From the NCBI GenBank assembly GCA_053919585.1, contig CM132792.1: a stretch of DNA of 64,000 nt; one strand, 5' to 3'. Shown in pieces: positions 6,172-30,328 of this stretch. This stretch comes from Euprymna scolopes. Its lineage: Eukaryota. The first letter of the stretch is position 1; each line of letters begins with the position of its first letter. The notes under the pieces are model-generated. The model had not been told where the DNA came from. It was given only the letters and a program-made list of their open reading frames with translations, and made no database searches. A program made the position numbers and the translations under genes.

Positions 6172-9100
6172 AGATGTGGCATCCCCCAACAACGGATGTG
6201 GTGCCTCCCGGCCCCCCCGACACGGTCGCTACACCAGGAGCGTCCCCCATGGTGAAGAAGCAGAGGCCTGTTCCTGGTTGTTTTCATAACACTTCACGGT
6301 AAACAATATTCTTAGTATATGTTACACCATGCTTTCTGCCCTGATTATCATCTTTATGCTGTTACATTACCTTAAATTTCACACTGTGCTTAGATCGAGC
6401 TCTTGAACATGCCACATACAGTGTACCATGAGAAAATACAGGTTGTTGAACATATATACCAACCTTATCAAAAGTTTGGCCTTGTGCTTTATTGATGGTC
6501 AGTGAATATGCTAATCGTATTGAAAACTATCCGATGAAATGCAAACGGAACATTTGTATCACTTAGCTTTAACTTAATTCTTGGAATGATAACTGTGGAA
6601 CCTCTATTAGATCCATTAATTAAAATAGCAATGATGCTGTTTTGATGACATTCTTTTATTTTCATCCTAGTTCCATTACAAAGTCCTTGATTTATGGATA
6701 AATTTCACAGTAGCATTACTATTGCCCCTGTTTTCACATCAAGTCAGTGAGCATTCCAGACAGAGTTAATGAATTTATGAACTCGATAGGATAATTTTGA
6801 AGTTCAGCATCATCATTGGAGATGTAATCTGTACTTAAATATGTATTTATGCCTTCGGGAAGATTATTTAGAATTTCTTCATTTACTGTTAAACATTCTG
6901 TATTTTTGGAGTTATGATGATTCTATTTTCCATTTCTTGAGGGCTGCAATCAAATGTTTCTGAGATTAGAGAACCATTACATACCAAATCATCAGGAACA
7001 TCTATATCATCTACAGGAACGTCATTAAGACTGCTCATTAGTGTACTATTACCAAGATGAAGGAGCTATCTACAAAACTTGTGTTCATTTATGTTAGTTC
7101 TAACGTTTTGTGTTAGCTGTAATTGACTGAAATGATGCCCCAATGTGCAACTTTTAAGACAGGTGTCTATAATAGATGTAGGTGATCCATGTGGCACTAC
7201 TGGCAAAATTTGGCTGACGTCACCTCCAAGTATGAGAAATTTTCCACCAAATATTTTATCGTTACTCATATCTTGTAGACATCTATCTATAGCAAGCAGT
7301 GTATGATTAAGTATCATAAAAGCTTCGTCTATGATGAATACCTTTATCCTTCTCAAAAAAAGAAGCATGCTCTGATACAGGAGAAACGTTACAGACACTG
7401 GTTTCTGTCAGAGGTACAGGTAGTTTGAATATACTGTGGAGTGTTTTCTCTGAAGTTAGTAGCATAGCAGCAATGCCAGTCCATGCCGCAGTGGCGGTTA
7501 CAGTACTGCTGGAGGTGAAGTAATCATATAACATGTTGAATAACAAGGTTTTTCCTGATCCGGCTGGGGCATCTAAATAGAAGCAATTGTTGTTTTGGGC
7601 TTCTTTTTCAGTTGCCATGACAGCCTTGATGATAGTATTAAAGACCTCTAATTGTTCATTGTTTAGCAATTCAACATTAGACCGGTTTGTATTTCGAGTC
7701 ATATTATCTATTGAAGGATCACCTGTTGGTTCAGGTAAACTCATTGCCTGGCAAGAAGAACCATGCGCATTAAATATTGCTTTTATCAAATGAAGTGCAA
7801 TGTTTTCACATATACATTCATCATAAGCAGAAATGAGGTTTTCAATCATGCTCTGTTTATGGTTAATAAATAGTTGAAAGGCATCCACTGGATGATGATA
7901 GAGACAGCATTGCAAACATTCTACGTAGTTGTTGTGGCATTCTAAATGTAGCCGCTTCAGTAAGAACATTTTCTAATTCAGTATCATCTTGCAATAATCT
8001 AAGGCTGATGCAAGCTTCTCTAAATGTAGGGAATGTATGACTTTGGACTGTTCTCAAATCTTCAAATGACTTTGCTCCAAAGACATGAAGAAGCAGAATC
8101 CGTAGATAAAACTTTTCACCTTGGTTTGGTGAAACTGAATACATTCTTGTGATCAAATTACTTGACCGCTTTCTTTTAGTCCATTTTGTAGTAGTTTTGT
8201 TAAATACATAATGATGTGGAATATCACAGTAAAAATATTGGTTAGCAGTAATATCATTCTGATTTAGTTCAAACCAAGCAGTCAAATTTGTGTGACGTTG
8301 TGCTTGTTGAATTGCTTATTCAGCTTGATAATAAATCTGTTGCTATCCAGGCATGTGTACAGCTAAACAGTACACAACATGAGACTATCCATGCATTTTA
8401 TAGTCAGAAAGACGCCACATTGCTTCTGGAGGTGATACATATCTGCATGATAGATATTGCTTGACTTCATCTCTTTGTTCTGATCGCATTGTTTCTCCTT
8501 CATCGATATTAATAGATGAATCATGGTTATTAACCTCCATCATAGCACTATCATGTCCTTTATAAACATATTTAAATATGTATTTTATACTCTTGACTGA
8601 AGAGCAGATTTCTAAGTTAATATGAGCTCCAAAAAAAAAAAGATATTTTCTCAGAAGAAATTTGTTGAAAGGGACTATGTATCTATTATCAACAGTAAAA
8701 TTATCGACTTGAACTGAGTAACCATTATTTGCACGTTTGTAAGCCAGGTATCCATCAATGTTTTCTACTGTTTCTTCTCTAAATGCCTTTGGAAATTTCT
8801 TTTTGCATAATCCTTTACTCATACAAGGAGAATTAGTATTAACTGCACCACATGGGCCATGTAGCATTCAAGATTTAACTAAATCACGAAGCTCTGGATC
8901 TTCAGGTCCAGGTATTTCTGCTGACACAATTGCATCAATTTGTTGAACTGTTCTGATCTTATCCTGATCTCGCAGCATTATGATCATGTGGCAGTGTGGT
9001 AACCCTCTTTTGAAATTCAATAACATAAACATATGCAACAGGAGTTCCCAATACATGTCTGTCTTTAATGCCTTTCAAAAGTTCAGTTAGATGTGCATGA

Positions 9101-9761
9101 TACACACGTGATATTAAGTCAGGTCGATTTTGTGCAAGTTCTGATGACCCCAAGTTGTTTAATATTTTAGGACATCTTGGATTACATGTATAGGTAAGGA
9201 ATAGGTCTGCCTTTCCATATTTACAGAAAACTGCCATTGCATCTTGATACAGTTGTTGAAGATTCCTAGGACTTCCTGTAAATGAAGATGGTAGAATAAC
9301 TGGTACACCAGGATCGCCATCTTCATTCCTTGCTAAATGATCCATTAAGCCAGAATATTGAGCAGCTCTTAGTTGACTTTGATGGCTTTTAATGAAGTTC
9401 AATCTGCACCCTTCAACTTTCACATATGCATCAACGACATATTGTTGGAATAGTTTACCAGATCTATGGATAATACTGAATGAATCTCTAATTGCAAGGC
9501 GATAACTGTAATACTCTTGCATTGTCACTTTATTGCGAACTCTTGTTTGCTGTTCTGGCCTATGTTGTATGTTTATGTGCCAGCCTTGTTCACCATTTGG
9601 AAATAATATAGGATATATCATGGGGTCCAAGTGGCAAGACAGATAAGAAATTCGGTGTTTTGCACAGAAACTATTAGAGTAGAAAGCTTTCTGGCGGTTA
9701 GGGACCTCAACAGTGAAGGGGTGAGATTTTGTTGCTAAGCGGGTTTGTCGGGCATATGTAC

Positions 9762-9796
9762 CACAGTGGGCCCAGATGGCCAATGTTTGGAAATAG
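9762..9796 (+). repeat. Transib 3' TIR (outer, second family member)
   Basis: CACAGTGGGCCCAGA is a perfect 15-bp inverse of 13543-13557, followed by tggccaatgttt and GGAAATAG. Confidence 0.85.
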
Positions 9797-10242
9797 AGGT
9801 GAAGCATCATCACAAATGACTTTTATAAGATTTTTTTCAAAACTTTTGAGGCATATGATCAACTTGGGTTCATTTTAATTAGATTTTAACTGATATTTGT
9901 CTCTGAAAACAGTTCTGGGACCAAATTGACCTATTTTGGCTGTGTCACAAAATGTCGCGAATCTACCGAAATTTACTAAATTCAGAGAAATATTGAAATA
10001 GGCATTATTTCAGTTTGGATTGAGATAGGAAAGTGGTTGAGGGCTTGTTAGAAGCGTATGGCCAAGGAGAACATAATGGAAGCAATTCATGTTGAGCTAA
10101 TATACCAGTTTATGTATTGGCTTTTATAAAGTAATGAATCTGTCTGAAATTGTGTATTTCTGTTGAAAATTGCACAGGTAACAATACAAACATTATGTGT
10201 ATTATTGAATTTTCTCAAAACCTCACATAAAGATAATATAAA

Positions 10243-10320
10243 TTAATCAAGAAAAATGTCTTCAATAAGGCTTGCATACCAGTTCTTGGACAAGCCAAAC
10301 AACCGATTATGTGAACATAT
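10243..10320 (-). pseudogene. Diverged second copy of the Transib transposase C-terminus
   Basis: Minus-strand translation ICSHNRLFGLSKNWYASLIEDIFLD* versus IRSHGRLVGLPKRWYASLVEDIFLD* at the end of the main ORF. Confidence 0.85.
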
Positions 10321-10322
10321 GG

Positions 10323-10357
10323 CACACTGGCCCCAGATCGCCAAACTTTGGAAATAG
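10323..10357 (+). repeat. Transib 3' TIR (inner)
   Basis: cacactggccccagatcgccaaactttggaaatag aligns without gaps to the 9762 TIR. Confidence 0.75.
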
Positions 10358-10647
10358 AGATTAGGCGAAGTCTTACTTTGATTTTTCTGGCATTTTCTCG
10401 TTTTTTTTTGTTTTTCAGTTTTATACCCAAGTACAGAGTAACTAAAGCATATTTTGACTTAGAGAAAGTGTATAAAAGGATACAGGAACCAAAAATGCTT
10501 TGATTTTGTCTAAATTCACGAAATTAGGAGAAATTATAAAATTGGAGTAGTTTCGTTGACTCAACCGAGATAATTCAGTTTGTGTTATGTTTCTCATTCC
10601 ATACTGGCAGATAAGAATATAAAATAAAACAACAAATAAATCACCAT

Positions 10648-12798
10648 CTAGTCAAGAAAAATGTCTTCAACGAGGCTTGCATACCACCGCTTCGGTAGAC
10701 CTACCAACCGACCATGCGACCGAATGGTGTGATCGTCAGCTCCACATTCCGTGCAAAATTTTCTTGCCTGATCTGATCGTTCCAGTAACCTGGCCATTAC
10801 ATCAGTTAATTGGAGCAGTGGGTCAGTTTTCCTCGACAAGAACTGCAAGTAGTTGCGAATGTCTTTGTTGTTCGACTCTAAGCATTCCTCTGACAGACTT
10901 CCCAGTCCATGAGCATCATTTAGACTCATCAATTCTGTTGAATGATGAAGAGTCCCATGCAAGGTGTGATTCATCATGACCCATGGGAAGTTGTCACACA
11001 AATTGTATGAAGTCTGCTCACAAAGTTCTTTGAACTTCATCAGATCGATCTTACGTGACGACGACACAACCGATAGAACAGTGGAGAGCTGACGATGAAG
11101 GAGAAGCAGGTTTTCTCAGTGTTTTTCATCAACTAATTTTTCGATTGAAGCTAGAACTTCCTCTGAAAAGAAGCGACGGCCTTGTGGACCATTGGTTGAT
11201 GTCCCACCTTTTCCACCAGCAGAGTTGACTCTATCAAGATACAGGCCTGTCTCTGTGTAGATCGCTTTGAGAACTCGATCCTTCGCTCGACGGACAGGTT
11301 CACCACGAACGTCGGACCTCTCAATCCACTGTTGGTAGTCAGCATGGCACCGATACAAAACCTTCAGGAACCACATTGTTCCATTGATGTACGAATGAGT
11401 CACAGTGATGCTTGATTGGTCAGATGTTGTGAGTGGCTTCTTGGTTAATCCTTGACGAGTCTCAAAATCTCCTTGTTTTGCTTTGACTTTACCATTCTCA
11501 TCAACTAGTTCATTGTACAGCTCGAGAGAATTCTTTGCCGATCTGTTAATGGGAAAGCCCTCTGCAACCTTGGTTCTGTCAGTCCAATCAGCCTGTTTTG
11601 TTGTGCATAGGATGCAATCAGCCCCTCCCAACCCTGAAATGTCCCTTTTGAATTTCAGATCCTTCATTGAATCGTGTACTATGACATTCACATCATATCC
11701 TTGACCATCAGCAGTAACAAAAATTCCATCTGAAGCCAACTCTTGGCGTGCTTTGTCTGTAGTGGGAACGACCATATTAAGAAGATCTTCATCGGTCTCT
11801 TTCTCCCTGATCAAGAATAGTGGTCTTAATGTTCTACAGTTGTTTGGCGAGTGATTCTGCCACAGACAAAAAGAAGAACCGTCCTGGTAACGAGCAAGTA
11901 GTTTCAGTGGTGTAATGCCATACTGGAACATATTTTCAGTTGCGTCCAGCATACTTGTAGAGTTCCACACTACTTGTTGACCAGCATCGTCACATCCATC
12001 TTTAAACACCATTTCAAGGACACCATCTCTGCATTTATCTTTTATGATTTTCTTAGGGATCAAGGATATGATGGACTCGATCGTCATTTTCACTAGGTCC
12101 TTGTACTGCACCTGAACTCCACTGTCATCAAGAACTGGGGAGATACTGGGGCGGAGCTTTTTACGTCCCTCCAACAACTCATTGCTGGTTGGAAAATAGA
12201 TTCCCTTCGCAGCAAGTATGTGCCTCATCTTTCTCATTTGCTCCCTACTCAACGTTAATGAATGCATCAATGCAATCGCTTCATTGATCTCAAAGGAATG
12301 AATATCGTTCACATTGGACGAAAATATCTCATACCCAACTCGAGCTGTCTTCTTTTCCGATTGAATATTCACACGATGAATCATATATCCTAGCAACTGA
12401 GTGACTGAAAGCTCAGGACATTCCTTTGCAGCGTATTCTTCAATGTAGTCGAGCAGACCCTGTGTTCTTTCCTTCTGCATTCTCTCCCCTAAGTTGACAA
12501 AACTCTTCCTTTGCTTCTTTCCAACTTGTGGACAGTTCCCTTCCATTTCGATTTCTTCTTTCGATGCTTGAGCAAGGATTTCGGTGTTTGCTAGGCGTTT
12601 CTTTTTCAATCGTTTGAAATGGTTCCATGCATTCAAGAAGAAGCCACTGATTTCTTTGTTTTCGTGAAAACCATGAGTTTCTCTGAATTGGCGAAAGCAT
12701 TTGGCATATTCAGGTGGTTTGGTACGGCATAATGCAGCCTGACTAATGATGGCTTCGAAGACCTGATATTCTGTGGTGAGAACATTGTTGCCTGCCAT
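10648..12798 (-). pseudogene. Transib/RAG1-core-like DDE transposase, about 716 codons with one in-frame TGA at 11116-11118
   Basis: ORFs 11116-12798 and 10648-11067 are in frame (DEKH*ENLLLLHRQLSTVLSVVSSSRKID). Motifs KDGCDDAG, RPLFLIREKE, SMKDLKF, CILC, HSYIN, STNGPQGRRFF, HGTLHH and GSLSEECLESNNK match the order of the RAG1/Transib core (D600, E662, D708, C727/C730, H795, H937/H942, E962 in mouse RAG1 numbering). Confidence 0.9.
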
Positions 12799-13518
12799 CT
12801 GAATATGATAATTTCTTTTTTTTAAACTTCAGTTAACCCGATAATAACCTGTAATGAAGAAAAAAGCATAGACATTAACTGAATGGTCATATAGAATAAT
12901 AGAATACTCAAAATATTTGATAGAACATGTAAAAGCAAACTAAAACTTTGGCAAAATGCCCGAATTTGGTAATTTGGTCCCAGATCCCGGAAAAATGAAA
13001 ATTCTATTTGTCAGAAAAAAAATTTACTGCTAAGATTTACAAAACAAATTTGACATAGTTAGAAAGGTCTTAGGCTATATTTTTTGAAACATATATACTT
13101 TGATATGTAAATCTTAGCGGTTTTTGAGCTATTTGAGGAATTGAACAAAAAATAAATGACAATTTTGCTGAAACATTAAGGTAAAATTTCACTAAATAAG
13201 CTTTTATCTTATCAAAATTTCATCTATTATACCACAAACAAGACCTCTGTTAGAAAAAAAAGATGAATTTAGTTATACAAATTGAAAAAATAACATCAAA
13301 AAACCCATTATGGCATTTTATTTACAAATTCTGGCTTAGTTTATATGATAAGGTTCATATGTAGTCAAGAATATGATCTCGACACGATTTTGAATTTCCG
13401 CTAGGTTTGAGATAGCATAAAATCACTTCACGTGATGCTACAGACCTAATTTTTTTTTTTGTTTGTTCAGAAATTTTATTTACTTACAGAATTTCTATAG
13501 TTCAAGGTACATAAAGAA

Positions 13519-13557
13519 AGTTTTTTTTAGGCTATTTCCACCTCTGGGCCCACTGTG
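13519..13557 (-). repeat. Transib 5' TIR resembling a 23-RSS
   Basis: Minus strand reads CACAGTG ggcccagaggtggaaatagccta AAAAAAACT: exact heptamer, 23-nt spacer, 7/9 match to nonamer ACAAAAACC. Confidence 0.85.
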
Positions 13558-14984
13558 TTTTGGTTGAGAATGTGGGTAAACAATAATATCTCTGTTAGCA
13601 GATGGAGCACCATCCTCACCAACAAATACTACATCTATTTCGTTGTTTATTGGATTGTTAAATCTTTTGATATCTGGACCAGCGGTGAAATGCATCAAAA
13701 CTCTCCTTGGCTTTACATTTTCCCTTATAGCACGTGCTTCCTCTTCTAATTCAATGGCCCTCATATTTTTATAAGCTTGGGCATAAGGATTATTCTCCAT
13801 AACTGTAGCTATGGTTTCAAAGACACTTTAGATACATTTATTATTTTCTGGTAAATTACACCGGAGTTGATTTGCTTCAGATAAGTCCAAGATGTAAATC
13901 TGTCCATATTTTCTCTCTTTTTCATTATTTGGGTGCAGAGTACTGGAATAATGATAGGTTTGACCTTGTAAGCAAAAACAATAGGGGCCTCTTCCAGGAG
14001 GGCGGACATTATTTGCTCCAAATGATGCAAATGAAAGTGAATTGCGTATATTAGATCTGAAATTAAACGCTTCTTTGTCATTACCTTTGAGTAACCTTTG
14101 GAGTTGAGGATAATCTTGTAAGGGAGGAAGAGAAACTTTTCGTTTTTGACAACAATTCGATGCTTCTCCTCGAAATCTAAGTGCTCTACAAAATGAGCAA
14201 ATCAAACTCACGTCACCTACAAAATAATATGGGATATTTTGTCTTTCTGCTTCATTCATATTGTTTTTTCGTTCCCGTTGCCTAGTTCTTTCATTTTGCA
14301 GATAAAGTTGTCTGTCTTCAATCGTGTTATTTATTTGCTGTCTCAATATGTTTCTCCTTTGCAATCTGATATTATCCCTTTCTTCAGTTCGTAGCTGCTG
14401 ACGCCTTTGTCTTTGTCGTTCTCTTGTATCTTCCAATGTAGTGCTAGTGATTTGGTTCATTCTGTGTGAAAATTTAACTGGGCTTAATAAAAAAAAATTA
14501 TAAATAAAGATTTTGATACGAAAAATAAATGTTTCTATAAGGAAATAAAATTCAATATAAATGTTTTAAATGAGAATAAATATTTCTTAATGAAACCGTT
14601 TTTTATATTAAAAATCATTAGTGTGTAATTTTTCTAAGAGAGAATTTAAATCAATATTTTTATAATTTAGCTCTGTAAAAAGGATATCTAGGTGAATTAT
14701 ATAATAATAAATTATTTCCTCTCATAACATTTATTGGTGCTTCTACACTTTGTCGCCAAAAAAAAGGATGCCATGTTTTTCAGCGCACCTGCTGCCAGAA
14801 TCCAAGAATGACATTAGTATTTTAAACTGTAGAAACTATTTTATTTATTCAATAAATATATTGAAGTGAAAGTGTAGAAGAACCTATTTTTTGCTTTGAT
14901 TAAAGAACTGTACACGCTTTCCAGTTATTTCATGATTTCGTCTAAATCATGTTCAAGCTTGATTGAGTTCCTATGATCTTAATG

Positions 14985-16340: not shown

Positions 16341-17047
16341 AAGAAAAAATCTGAGATTGGGAGCTCGATATTGGTGGGCACTGGAAGGTACGTGTCAGCA
16401 GGCTGCTGAGCTGGTTGTTAGTGGGTCGCTGGAGTGAGAGGCTGGAGGCGCCAGAGCCAGACAGGTTCCAGTGGTCGAGTGGGCAGGCGTCTCAGAGTGT
16501 ATGCAGTGATTTGTTGAAGGTGGAAAAAGTTTCAGAAGTTAGCCCTGAAAAGAGCTGCTTGTTAATTTGTTGGGAAAAACTTTCGGAGGTAGTCCTGAGG
16601 TTTTTATAATTTATTTTCTGTAAAATTATAAACAAATTGGCATGAGACCAACTCAAAAAACGTGGATCTGTAGTCACACCTGTCACTATACCTTTTACTT
16701 TACTGGGACTGTGGTTTGGCAAGACTAGGATCTGCATAGGCAGGGAACACCTACTCTAACTTGGCTCTTTGTTTATTGATTGTTGATTAAGACAAGCTTG
16801 CTGTCTTAATCTATCTTCTGTCGAAAGCCACAGGATGTAATCTCTTATCAGTCCTGATCTTGACCATGAACTGGTGTTTTAAGAACACAACTAGATCTTG
16901 GTCTGCCCAATATTCAACCCTATGCTTCTCATTCAGTCTCGACGTCCACAACCATTCTGACTATGGCCAGGATCACAAGAAACACCATTTGATTTCTCCC
17001 CGTTCCATAGTAGTGTGGCTTGTGCACGACTACATCTTTTACACCTC

Positions 17048-17180
17048 AAATTAAAAAAACTAAAGTTCAAATTAAAAAAACACAACTTCAAATTAAAAAA
17101 CACAACTTCAAATTAAAAAAACTAAACTTCAAATTAAAATACACAACTTCAAATTAAAAAAATCCAAGTTCAAATTAAAT
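17048..17180 (+). repeat. 21-bp subterminal tandem array (AAATTAAAAAAACACAACTTC-like, about 6 units); inverted array at about 18500-18612
   Basis: Read directly from the sequence inside both Tc1 ends. Confidence 0.88.
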
Positions 17181-17210
17181 TAAAATTTTATTACATGATA
17201 GATAAACCAT

Positions 17211-18344
17211 TTATTCTCCAACAGGGAGGTCCTCTTCCCTGAGACATCTAGCGTGATGGCGTTGAACCCGATTACAGAATGCCTGAGACATGGCAGGAGT
17301 TACCACTTGGTAGGCTCGGTCGATGGCGGTCTCCACAAGACGAAGACGGTGCTCCACTTTTGTGATATCTTCCGGTTGTGGCACATGTATAACGCTCGGT
17401 AGATCCCTCTTGATGACGGCTTTGATGGCTGACCAGGCCATTTCGATGGGGTTGAGAGCCGGGCTGTATGGAGGCAAGCGAATAAACTCCACTTCTGCAA
17501 AAGCTGCCTGGTCGTGTAGTTGTTCCACTCGGGAATGGCACGGGGCGTTGTCAATTACCAAGGCTACCTGTCCGGCATCATATCCCATTGCGAAGACAGA
17601 ATTGAGTAGTTCTGCAACCCATTGGTTGACGTCCGGGTGCTTGTAGGCGCCACGCCTGCGGGTGAAGTTGATGAGTCCCTGTTGACTAATACCAGCAACC
17701 ATGTGAATATTTGGACCTTTCGAGCCTGGAACATGTAGCACCACTCTCTGGCCCCTCGCGGATCGTCCAACGGTCCGAGTACAAAATAAGTTCACGTTTG
17801 ACTCATCCAAATACACCACATGTTTACCAGCTCCCAATGCGGCCATAACCCTTTCTACATAGATACGACGTTTTACCTTATTCTCTGGAGTGTTGACATT
17901 CTCGGCTTGCTTGTGAACCCGTTTTACAGTGAAGAGTCTACCATCGAGATAGTTATTTATGGTAGTAACGCTGATTGGGGGGTTGATTCCATGCATCTCC
18001 GAAATCTTCAAGGCCAACTCCTTGAGAGTGATGGTAGGATCTTCTCCGATTATATCAAGCATGTTGTTGACCATGTCCGGATTCACTTTCCCATGTCGCC
18101 TTCCACCCCGCGGCTTATCCTCCACGTCTTGCCCCTTGGCCTGTTTATTCACCCAGGCGTACGCGGTGTTCCTATTTATCCCACAGTTCTCTGCGACAGT
18201 TGTCCAGTCCCTGCTATTTCAAGCGGCTTCCAGAATCCGACGCTTAGGAGAATTTCGATTGCGTTTGTACTGACCACGTACTGTGCCTCTCTTGACTCCT
18301 CTACTTGATCGCACAACTACCGGAGATCCATTGTTATTTTCCAT
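17211..18344 (-). pseudogene. DD35E transposase with one in-frame stop at 18219-18221
   Basis: ATG at 18344 is in frame with ORF 17211-18152. HTH-like N-terminus, YLDESN, IDNAPCH, LPPYSPALNPIE; 35 residues between the second D and E. Confidence 0.88.
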
Positions 18345-20119
18345 ATTTTAAATTATTGTAATGTTAATTGTTAGAAACTTTTCTTTTTTTATTGTTGCGA
18401 GCAACTACAAGTAATAGTGGGTAATTTGCATAAGTGATGTTATGCAAATTACCTTACAAAGTTTGAGTATGAATAATTCTAACATAATGTCACGTGCTTT
18501 TAAATTGAACTTGGGTTTATTTAATTTGATGTTGTCTTTTTTTAATTTGAAGTTTAGTTTTTTTAATTTGAAGTTGTGTTTTTTAATTTGAAGTTGTGCT
18601 TTTTTAATTTGAGGTGTAAAAGGTGTAGACATGTTCAATTGGCGAGAATGCTTGGAATCGATGTGAGCCATCATCTTGTTGACATACGTCCACTAATGAC
18701 AGAGTTCATTGCAATCAAAGAAACCGTGCTCCAGTGTTTCTTCTGCTGAGGTCCCGCAGCAGGGGCACTCAGGCCAACTCCTTAGTTTGGCACTGCATTG
18801 TATGGTGTTGAGGGGCAACGCGTTGGGGGATAGTTGCCAGGTCAGGGAGAATTTGGAGTTGTTTATTACTTCTGAGCTTAGCGCCCAGCACCATCGGAAG
18901 CGGATCTCCTCCGGCAACCCCAGACACTTGATGAGCAGGTCATTAGTGGCTCCCCTGACTAATTCCTTATGCAGCTGTTTTCTTGAAGCCCATGAAAGGT
19001 TGCTGGACCTAGGTGTCTTCTTGAACACGGCTCGGCATTCCCTGAAGAACTGCATGTCACCCGGCGGCCTTAAACACGCCTCAACCGTGTGGTCAAAGAT
19101 GAGGTTGGGAAATTCAGCCTTGACCATGAAGTCTCACACAGACTCTTCTATCAACGTTCAATTTGGGAAGGCCAGCCTTTCGGCGTCGCAATAACACATG
19201 AAGTTGAGCACTTCCAGGTCTCCTTTGGAGGTAGTCCTGATAAGGGCTGTTTAAACAATTACTGCTGCTGAGCAGTCGGCTGCCAAGCTCTGACGACTTG
19301 ATGGGGCACGTCAAAGTTGCGTCTGGGAAGACTCTTTGCTCCCCTGCCGAAAGCCGTTATTTAGTTCTCTCCCACTGCAAGAACTGTGACACCAAGGTTG
19401 GAAAGTTGAGATTGGGAAGTCAGTACCCCTGAGGAGATGCACTCTTACCTGCAAAAAATGCTGAGCATTTCTGGGTGAAGGCGCCTCAGGCGATTAGCAA
19501 TAAACTAGCCCATTCTCAAAGAGAAGGGAAAGCCTGGGAGGGTGGACCTCCTAGAAGTGCATAGAACTTTACTCCCACCACAAAATCAACAGAGATCGGA
19601 TCATTACAGGAATGGTCTAATCTGTTGATTTTGGGTGCCGAAGATAAAAATTCCCCGCCAAATCTGCATTTATGAAAAATTGTTTACTCAGCCGCAGTGC
19701 GCACAATACAAGAATAAATGACTAAAATTAATTTAAGCTGGTATTAATAATAGTCAATACAATCATTTTAGCTCGGAATTAAAGTCTTTTCTTTTTGTTT
19801 CATGGAGAACAGGTTGAATTCGTGTTATTTCTTTTCTTTTCTGTTCGAAACGAGAAAAGGGTTGTTACTATTTTTATTAAATGGTAGTAATAACGGTTGT
19901 CTACAGACAGGCGGCGTATACAAGATTGTTTACAAATGGCTGATGTAGTAAATACACATCACGACAGCCTAAGCTCCCCCTCTTCAGTTTAAAATATATT
20001 TTAAAATTATTTTATTGCTTTGAAGCAAATCGAATCTGTTTTTCTAAGCAATTTTATGTCAAAAATAGTAATATATCCAAAAATTACAAAAATTCATTGA
20101 GTATGATAAATTTTTACTA

Positions 20120-30132: not shown

Positions 30133-30328
30133 NNNNNNNNNNNNNNNNNNNNNNNNNNNNNNNNNNNNNNNNNNNNNNNNNNNNNNNNNNNNNNNNNNNN
30201 NNNNNNNNNNNNNNNNNNNNNNNNNNNNNNNNNNNNNNNNNNNNNNNNNNNNNNNNNNNNNNNNNNNNNNNNNNNNNNNNNNNNNNNNNNNNNNNNNNNN
30301 NNNNNNNNNNNNNNNNNNNNNNNNNNNN
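30133..30328. other. Assembly gap (196 N)
   Basis: Run of N. Confidence 1.

What the first reader, a model, noticed from the sequence alone, without database searches (positions are those of the whole stretch)
9658..9761. Transib mobilised through a cryptic CACAG end, capturing 99 bp of foreign flank
Seen: the TSD TTTTG borders CACAGAAAC at 9663, not the true TIRs at 9762 or 10323, whose 5-bp flanks (TGTAC, TATGG) do not match. The Helitron frame is restored only with the 9663 boundary. The 99 bp between is neither Helitron nor TIR. Inference: the transposase cut at a heptamer-only cryptic site, analogous to RAG cleavage at cryptic RSSs starting with CAC, and transduced donor flank. Caveat: the direct repeat extends to 8 bp (GTGTTTTG) because GTG overlaps the TIR.
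Basis: partly seen in the sequence, partly recalled or inferred. Interest (0 to 1): 0.72.

Follow-up and report, generated by a model that had tools for sequence, protein, structure and literature searches.

The report
Foreign 99 bp at a Transib end
A young RAG1-like (Transib) jumping gene sits inside a Helitron with 99 foreign bases, a scrap of a very abundant repeat, wedged exactly where its enzyme cuts; this looks more like a repair patch added after a normal insertion than like mobilisation from a cryptic cut site, but the two are not yet separated.

Summary
TTTTG flanks 9663 and 13557. Removing 9663-13562 makes the Helitron protein align without a gap to eight homologues. Reads and contigs of other Helitron copies show that exact 3,900-bp skip, with a single GTGTTTTG.

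Other family copies end at the CACAGTG of 9762 with unrelated flanks. The 99 bp is therefore neither Helitron nor a normal Transib terminus.

New here:
- 9666-9761 is an internal fragment of a very abundant repeat, with read depth about 1,300 against about 5 for the Transib.
- That repeat's consensus reads GGA where the window has CAC (9663-9665), so the "cryptic heptamer" is not ordinary repeat sequence.
- The site has no TIR likeness beyond CACAG.
- One contig from another sample of the same species appears to join TTTTG directly to CACAGTG, skipping the 99 bp.

My best reading (about 0.55) is a canonical insertion, followed by a break at the transposase cut site that was patched with about 96 bp copied from elsewhere, most simply the flank of another Transib copy. 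Cryptic-heptamer transduction stays possible (about 0.2).

No donor locus was found, and no read confirms the window's own junctions. Earlier notes of this scan described this Transib family elsewhere, but not this feature.

The parts
9658..9662 (+). Left copy of the 5-bp target-site duplication TTTTG (Helitron sequence).
   Evidence: Empty-site contig and reads carry a single GTGTTTTG.
9663..9665 (+). CAC, three junction bases that belong to neither the Helitron, the abundant repeat's consensus (GGA here) nor a TIR. CA is also what a 2-nt P addition to ...TTTTG would give.
   Evidence: (loose-end consensus before 9666; C>A at 9665 in every read or contig that covers it).
9666..9761 (+). 96-bp internal fragment of a very abundant dispersed repeat. 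It is about 17% diverged from that repeat's consensus in the one 30-nt stretch compared. The consensus continues beyond both ends of the fragment.
   Evidence: depth about 1,300 in X21 raw reads against about 5 for the Transib, with loose ends before 9666 and behind 9761; 25 of 30 matches to the consensus piece; no other copy in the window.
9762..9796 (+). True outer TIR of the family, long type: CACAGTG (9762-9768), 19-bp spacer, TGGAAATAG (9788-9796).
   Evidence: Other copies end exactly here: L003 and L004 and the X13 contig.
9762..10322 (+). 561-bp tail of a related Transib, stacked outside the inner TIR. It is carried by all family copies seen, so it is part of the canonical element.
   Evidence: repeat families D5 and D7; L003 and L004 cover it; X13 contig 9762-13557.
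10323..10357 (+). Inner, second long-type TIR (CACACTG, 19 bp, TGGAAATAG).
10648..12798 (-). Transib transposase, here split into ORFs of 560 and 139 aa and lacking 10 codons behind 10769. An intact relative, P0199, has 726 aa.
   Evidence: (Pfam RAG1, E 2.8e-9; 99.3% identity to P0199; 30 letters put in behind 10769 in the contigs of all three contig runs).
13532..13557 (-). Right TIR, short type: CACAGTG, 10-bp spacer, TGGAAATAG.
13558..13562 (+). Right copy of the TSD TTTTG.
8959..9657 (-). Helitron Rep region downstream of the insertion (HRISYLS..., Helitron_like_N domain).
   Evidence: (PF14214, E 1.4e-47).
13563..14460 (-). Helitron protein upstream of the insertion, ending ..IIVYPHSQ; the next two residues, P and K, use bases of the TSD. 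It holds one in-frame stop (13801-13803).
7066..7969 (-). PIF1-type helicase pieces of the same, frame-broken Helitron.
   Evidence: PF05970, E 1e-19 and 8e-19.

Best explanation
**Model.** A canonical copy of a young mollusc Transib (9762-13557, long-type end on the left, short-type end on the right) inserted into a Helitron Rep gene and duplicated TTTTG. Later, DNA was broken exactly at the left TIR/flank border, which is where this enzyme family nicks and makes a hairpin on the flank. The break was resealed without loss of the element, but with about 96 bp of filler (9666-9761) and three junction bases (CAC).

**Source of the filler.** The filler is a fragment of a very abundant repeat. The simplest route is synthesis-dependent repair:
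1. The cut TIR end invaded another Transib copy that sits inside such a repeat (next to TGTAC).
2. Synthesis ran about 96 nt out into that copy's flank.
3. The new strand was end-joined to the opened TTTTG hairpin. CA could be P nucleotides.

Capture of a stray repeat fragment or cDNA at the break is a less specific variant of the same idea.

**Shown:** the boundaries, the foreign and repeat-derived nature of the 99 bp, the canonical family terminus at 9762, and the empty Helitron site.

**Inferred:** the order of events, the transposase as the source of the break, and the template.
For: - The insert lies exactly between the TSD and the first base of an intact, family-typical TIR. That is the only position the transposase cuts. 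Published basis: nick-hairpin cleavage at the heptamer border and an invariable 5-bp TSD for Transib (PMC4840297).
- A contig of run X1 (same species label, depth 12.4, similar to other single-locus joints there) joins 9662 to 9762 with 5 letters shared. This is the canonical TTTTG|CACAGTG form. No X1 contig shows the window's C at 9665.
- The repeat's consensus reads ...GAGGGA up to 9665, so CAC mismatches it at 3 of 3 positions, while the 30 nt compared a few bases further on (9669-9698) match 25 of 30. This is as expected if CAC is junctional rather than templated.
- The right edge of the filler coincides with the TIR end. Copying from another element's flank explains this without any further coincidence.
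- Filler DNA and SDSA-type patches within 3 bp of transposon ends are documented at transposon-induced breaks (PMC5023962).
- Weak: none of the copy's 6 private substitutions lies in the left 1,356 bp (P about 0.07). This is compatible with the left part having been recopied.
Against: - The X1 joint is a single short contig (28 letters on its shorter side), and the tool flags it 'between: not known'. It may not be a clean join, and it could come from a duplicated Helitron+Transib locus.
- CAC, the three bases every RAG-type enzyme needs, has only about a 1-2% chance of arising as random junction bases.
- No template locus (a Transib next to this repeat copy) was found.
- No read or contig in the four runs laid confirms either junction of the 99 bp as assembled. 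X21 was sampled at only about 2% of the run.
- There is no clear microhomology at either junction.
Confidence: 0.55

Rival explanations
1. At a donor locus the Transib lay inside a copy of the abundant repeat. The transposase paired the right TIR with a heptamer-only cryptic site (CACAGAA) 99 bp outside the true left TIR, excised the longer unit and integrated it into the Helitron, duplicating TTTTG. The canonical-looking junction in run X1 would then be a later 99-bp deletion between the two CACAG repeats.
For: - The TSD borders CACAG, which begins with the CAC that is indispensable for RAG and Transib cleavage (PMC4840297).
- The 99 bp ends precisely at a true TIR preceded by a plausible former TSD, TGTAC.
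- The 5-bp CACAG repeat would allow microhomology-mediated deletion back to a canonical-looking junction.
- The family already moves with 561 bp of a relative's tail between an outer and an inner TIR, so outer ends can be used.
Against: - CAC mismatches the repeat's consensus (GGA) at all three positions, exactly where homology to the repeat stops.
- The site has no nonamer: 2 of 9 matches at 19-bp spacing and 5 of 9 at 10-bp spacing. It scores no better than 38-62% of other CACAG sites.
- Transib activity depends on the heptamer and is sensitive to nonamer position.
- It needs two rare events, cryptic transposition plus a precise deletion, to explain the X1 contig.
- No donor was found.
Confidence: 0.2
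2. The 99 bp is not a germline feature of this locus. It would be an assembly or read-level artefact, or a variant private to the assembled haplotype with no mechanistic link to the transposase.
For: - None of the four runs laid shows the window's C at 9665. All 8 X21 reads and all 6 X1 contigs covering that place read the repeat's A.
- X1 seems to hold the junction without the 99 bp.
Against: - Overlaps of 3-5 bp cannot cause a misjoin in a long-read assembly.
- The fragment is a diverged, specific repeat copy placed to the base between TSD and TIR.
- X21 was read at only about 2% of the run, and contigs drop rare variants, so absence proves little.
Confidence: 0.1
3. The 99 bp is ordinary Helitron sequence, or the normal outer terminus of this Transib family.
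For: The 33 codons are open in the Helitron frame. The chance of that is about 0.2.
Against: - Homologues and empty-site reads lack it.
- L003 has an unrelated flank directly at CACAGTG, and L004 and the X13 contig end there.
- Its depth is more than 100-fold that of either element.
Confidence: 0.01

Closest known systems
Filler DNA and SDSA-type patches at transposon-induced double-strand breaks (rice and other grasses, Wicker et al. 2016, PMC5023962). From my own knowledge: ectopic-template gap repair after P-element excision, and 'open-and-shut' joints in V(D)J recombination.
   Same: Unrelated DNA of tens of bp is inserted within 0-3 bp of a transposon end, and it has a source elsewhere in the genome. 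In an open-and-shut joint the element end and its flank are cut and rejoined with added bases.
   Different: Here the element was retained rather than excised. The filler may be the flank of a paralogous copy. The case concerns a Transib, for which my literature searches turned up no such natural footprint. The order of events is inferred, not observed.
Cleavage at cryptic RSSs by RAG, and pseudo-end use by other cut-and-paste transposases (my own knowledge; CAC requirement cited from PMC4840297).
   Same: A CAC-initiated site outside the proper signal forms the boundary of the mobilised or joined DNA.
   Different: The CAC is not part of the repeat consensus from which the rest of the 99 bp derives. 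No nonamer is present, no donor is known, and a canonical junction form seems to exist.
Canonical Transib elements with asymmetric RSS-like ends (Kapitonov and Jurka 2005 and Hencken et al. 2012, as cited in PMC4840297; same family noted elsewhere in this genome by earlier findings).
   Same: RAG1-like transposase, CACAGTG termini, 5-bp TSD, and 19/10 spacing to a shared 9-mer.
   Different: This copy has 99 extra bases between its TSD and its long-type end, and it is damaged (10 codons missing, ORF split).

Membership tests
Transib superfamily element | RAG1-like DDE transposase | tested here: met
   Pfam RAG1 PF12940, E 2.8e-9. Homologues carry PF26100 RAG1_RNase_H; 99.3% identity to the intact 726-aa P0199.
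Transib superfamily element | Terminal inverted repeats that begin with CACAGTG-like heptamers | tested here: met
   9762 and 13557, with zero mismatches over 15 nt. Other copies end at the same bases.
Transib superfamily element | 5-bp target-site duplication directly next to both TIRs | tested here: not met
   TTTTG abuts the right TIR, but on the left it is 99 bp away from the TIR. This displacement is the anomaly under study. The element is still a Transib by its other features.
Helitron (host element) | Rep (Helitron_like_N) plus PIF1-type helicase on one strand | tested here: met
   PF14214, E 1.4e-47. PF05970, E 1e-19. The copy is broken by frameshifts and by this insertion.
Cryptic-signal cleavage with flank transduction | The boundary base triplet CAC belongs to the donor flank | tested here: inconclusive
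   The flank is a repeat fragment whose consensus reads GGA there. The specific source copy could not be found.
Cryptic-signal cleavage with flank transduction | The site resembles a transposon end beyond the heptamer start (nonamer at proper spacing) | tested here: not met
   12 of 35 matches to the long end and 11 of 26 to the short end. 38-62% of other CACAG sites score as well.
Cryptic-signal cleavage with flank transduction | A donor locus exists with the same sequence beside a TIR, or with an excision scar | not testable with these tools
   No whole-genome DNA search of this species is on hand. The window, a metagenome scan and a protein word search were all blank.
Filler-DNA repair at a transposase-made break | The extra DNA sits at the enzyme's cleavage position | tested here: met
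   It lies between the TSD and base 1 of the TIR.
Filler-DNA repair at a transposase-made break | The filler has a source elsewhere in the genome | tested here: met
   9666-9761 matches a repeat at a depth of about 1,300 in raw reads, and the consensus runs on at both ends.
Filler-DNA repair at a transposase-made break | An ancestral form of the same insertion without the filler exists | tested here: inconclusive
   One X1 contig joins 9662 to 9762 (depth 12.4, shorter side 28 letters, 5 shared letters), but it is flagged 'between: not known'.

The most novel reading that the evidence does not exclude
A natural Transib transposase, in vivo, cut at a heptamer-only cryptic site 99 bp outside its own intact end. 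It then transposed the longer unit, carrying donor flank into a new locus. This would be an invertebrate counterpart of RAG cleavage at cryptic RSSs, and a route by which RAG-like transposons could shuffle host DNA.
Probability: 0.2. Interest if true: 0.7.

Novelty: new member of a known kind. Interest (0 to 1): 0.4.

Why it matters
This Transib family is young: copies differ by about 0.2%, and an intact 726-aa transposase exists. It has RSS-like asymmetric ends.

A locus where foreign DNA sits exactly at the cleavage border, possibly alongside a canonical form of the same insertion in another individual, is a natural record of what happens after a RAG-like enzyme cuts one end in an invertebrate germline:
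- If the repair reading is right, it is an in-vivo 'open-and-shut'-type joint with templated filler.
- If the cryptic-site reading is right, it shows off-target cleavage and flank transduction by a RAG1 relative.

Either outcome can be decided with existing reads of this species and a simple in-vitro cleavage assay.

Tried and rejected
**Readings rejected**
- The 99 bp is Helitron sequence. Rejected: homologues align without a gap when it is removed, and empty-site reads lack it.
- 9663 is the family's normal terminus. Rejected by L003, L004 and the X13 contig.
- A nested outer Transib begins at 9663. Rejected: there is no matching right end, and the Helitron resumes right after TTTTG at 13563.
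- The abundant repeat first inserted into the Helitron and the Transib then landed in it. Rejected: no repeat remnant lies between 13557 and TTTTG.
- The stacked piece 9762-10322 is a local nesting event. Rejected: every family copy seen carries it.
- A repeat subfamily reads TTTTGCAAAG, suggested by the C>A row at 9665. This is most likely an end-of-alignment effect of ordinary repeat copies, whose consensus has A there.

**Searches that gave nothing**
- The 99 bp against the window.
- Earlier findings searched by sequence.
- JGI metagenome scan for the repeat core.
- Rfam on 9560-9860.
- Exact look-up of the 284-aa ORF.
- Word search with the 52-aa peptide spanning TIR and repeat.

L001 (88% identical subfamily) lacks its ends and was of no use. 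The caps on the look-up of sequencing runs and read laying (one call each) prevented a second, finer lay on 9600-9800.

Full report
**1. What is in the sequence**

The window reads ...TTCGGTGTTTTG|CACAGAAAC... at 9651-9671 and ...GGGCCCACTGTG|TTTTG|GTTGAG... at 13546-13568.
- TTTTG occupies 9658-9662 and 13558-13562.
- A family-typical end lies at 9762: CACAGTG, 19 bp, TGGAAATAG.
- A second such end lies at 10323.
- The right end is CACAGTG, 10 bp, TGGAAATAG, finishing at 13557.
- The five bases before 9762 and before 10323 are TGTAC and TATGG. Neither equals TTTTG.

**2. The host is a Helitron, and the 3,900-bp cut restores it**

The minus strand carries Helitron_like_N (E 1.4e-47) and PIF1 helicase pieces.

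With 9663-13562 removed, the protein reads ..NRDIIVYPHSQPK|HRISYLSCHLDPMIYPILFPNGEQGW... Of 40 database homologues that match both sides, about 30 have no extra residues at the junction. Eight aligned together show no gap. The 33 residues encoded by the 99 bp match nothing, and hits to the 284-aa ORF stop at about 80% coverage.

At DNA level, one search shows:
- A 490-nt contig of run X3 and 8 raw reads of X21 skip exactly 9654 to 13555, with 8 letters (GTGTTTTG) fitting either side.
- Two more diverged Helitron copies also show one TTTTG.

The inserted unit is therefore 9663-13557 plus one TTTTG.

**3. The family's normal end is 9762**

The transposase is 99.3% identical to P0199, an intact 726-aa protein.
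- P0199's contig, L003, has 30 nt of unrelated flank (...GTCTCCA) directly before CACAGTG.
- L004 begins at CACAGTG.
- A 3,855-nt contig of X13 covers 9762-13557 exactly and then runs into a different right flank.

All of these contain the 561-bp piece 9762-10322. The 'stacked ends' are therefore an inherited part of the element, not a local event. The 99 bp is not a family terminus.

**4. What the 99 bp is**

Laying reads gave a depth of about 1,300 in the bin holding 9666-9761 for X21 raw reads, against about 5 along the Transib and 10-130 along the Helitron. The contig runs gave correspondingly huge word depths.

Hundreds of reads run on beyond both ends of the fragment with a common sequence:
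- ...GTTCGAGGGA before 9666.
- GTCGAGGGGGCAC... after 9761.

So 9666-9761 is an internal fragment of a very abundant dispersed repeat. In the one 30-nt stretch compared (9669-9698) it matches the consensus at 25 of 30 positions, about 17% divergence. The window holds no other copy. Rfam gives nothing. I could not identify the repeat family.

**5. The three bases CAC**

The repeat consensus places GGA at 9663-9665. Every read or contig that covers 9665 shows A, not C. Homology to the repeat therefore starts at 9666, and CAC is unaccounted for by Helitron, repeat or TIR.

Beyond CACAG the site does not look like an end:
- It matches the long end at 12 of 35 positions and the short end at 11 of 26.
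- 38-62% of the window's 120 other CACAG sites score as well.
- The nonamer matches only 2 of 9 at 19-bp spacing and 5 of 9 at 10-bp spacing.

Published work shows Transib needs the CAC heptamer start and is sensitive to nonamer position (PMC4840297).

**6. A form without the 99 bp**

In run X1 (same species label as the 2026 runs) one contig joins 9662 to 9762, skipping 99 bases with 5 shared letters. This is TTTTG|CACAG|TGGG, the canonical junction. Its depth is 12.4, like other single-locus joints in that run.

With k = 31, such a contig cannot arise from a 5-bp repeat alone.

Caveats:
- The shorter side is 28 letters.
- The tool marks it 'between: not known'.
- The locus could be a duplicate.

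No run showed the window's own left junction. However, X21 was sampled at about 2% of the run, and contigs drop rare variants.

**7. Mechanism**

Two models fit the anatomy.

*(a) Later filler.*
1. A canonical insertion duplicates TTTTG.
2. The transposase, or another nuclease, cuts at the left border. The flank end is hairpinned, as this enzyme family does.
3. The TIR end invades another Transib copy lying in the abundant repeat next to TGTAC.
4. Synthesis runs about 96 nt into that flank.
5. The product is end-joined to the opened hairpin. TTTTG plus CA would be a 2-nt P addition, and the C remains unexplained.

Filler and SDSA-type patches next to transposon ends are documented (PMC5023962).

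Weighing the two:
- Chance CAC under (a) is about 1-2%.
- Under (b), a usable CAC that mismatches the repeat consensus at all three positions is about equally unlikely.
- The X1 contig and the lack of any nonamer tip the balance to (a). Under (b) that contig needs an extra, precise CACAG-mediated deletion.

A weak further hint comes from the copy's private changes. All six private substitutions lie in 11118-13514 and none in the left 1,356 bp (P about 0.07). My estimates are 0.55 for (a), 0.2 for (b) and 0.1 for an artefact or unrelated private variant.

**8. Comparison and novelty**

The element is a Transib by transposase, heptamer ends and spacing. The same family has been described elsewhere in this genome by earlier notes of this scan, but not this feature. 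Its only failed family feature is that the left TSD does not touch the TIR.

The event is closest to filler-DNA repair at transposon breaks and to V(D)J open-and-shut joints. It is a new instance of a known kind of event, unless the cryptic-cut reading is proven.

**9. Limits**

- No whole-genome DNA search of this species was available.
- The single read-laying run used 153-bp bins.
- The donor or template copy, the repeat's identity and the allele status of the two junction forms remain open.
- Organism names were coded, so I did not try to name the species.

Noticed in passing
window 9762-10357: The 'stacked' second long-type TIR, and the 561 bp of a relative's transposase tail outside it, are present in every family copy seen (L003, L004, the X13 contig). 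The composite is the family's canonical structure, inherited rather than formed at this locus. It shows that an outer true TIR can carry a relative's fragment along.
   Followed up: partly
window 10769 and 11067-11118: This copy lacks 30 bp (10 codons) that the contigs of all three contig runs, and L002-L004, hold behind 10769. Its transposase is split into 560-aa and 139-aa ORFs, so it is probably non-autonomous.
   Followed up: partly
window 11118-13514: All six substitutions private to this copy (11118, 11268, 11375, 11987, 12847, 13514) lie in the right two thirds, and none in 9762-11117 (P about 0.07). This is compatible with the left part having been recopied from another copy.
   Followed up: partly
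window 9923 to 12446 (X21 reads); L002: The family has internal-deletion derivatives. L002 joins 11441 to 12932. Three X21 reads join 9923 to 12446 with 29 letters between them that form a near-perfect palindrome, a possible hairpin-type filler.
   Followed up: no
window 9300-13900, runs X3-X6, X11, X12: Runs labelled as several different organisms hold 70-80% of the sampled words. X3 carries a Transib contig with only 7 differences in about 3.5 kb, and a Helitron empty-site contig 98.6% identical to the window. These are either very close species or recent sharing of both elements.
   Followed up: no
window 17020-17207 and 18477-18638: Arrays of 20-21-bp tandem repeats in inverted orientation (up to 99% complementary over 73 nt) flank about 1.3 kb that holds a 313-aa ORF (17211-18152, minus strand). 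This looks like a transposon with repetitive subterminal inverted arms.
   Followed up: no
window 30133-30328: A run of 196 N (gap or masked). Left untouched.
   Followed up: no
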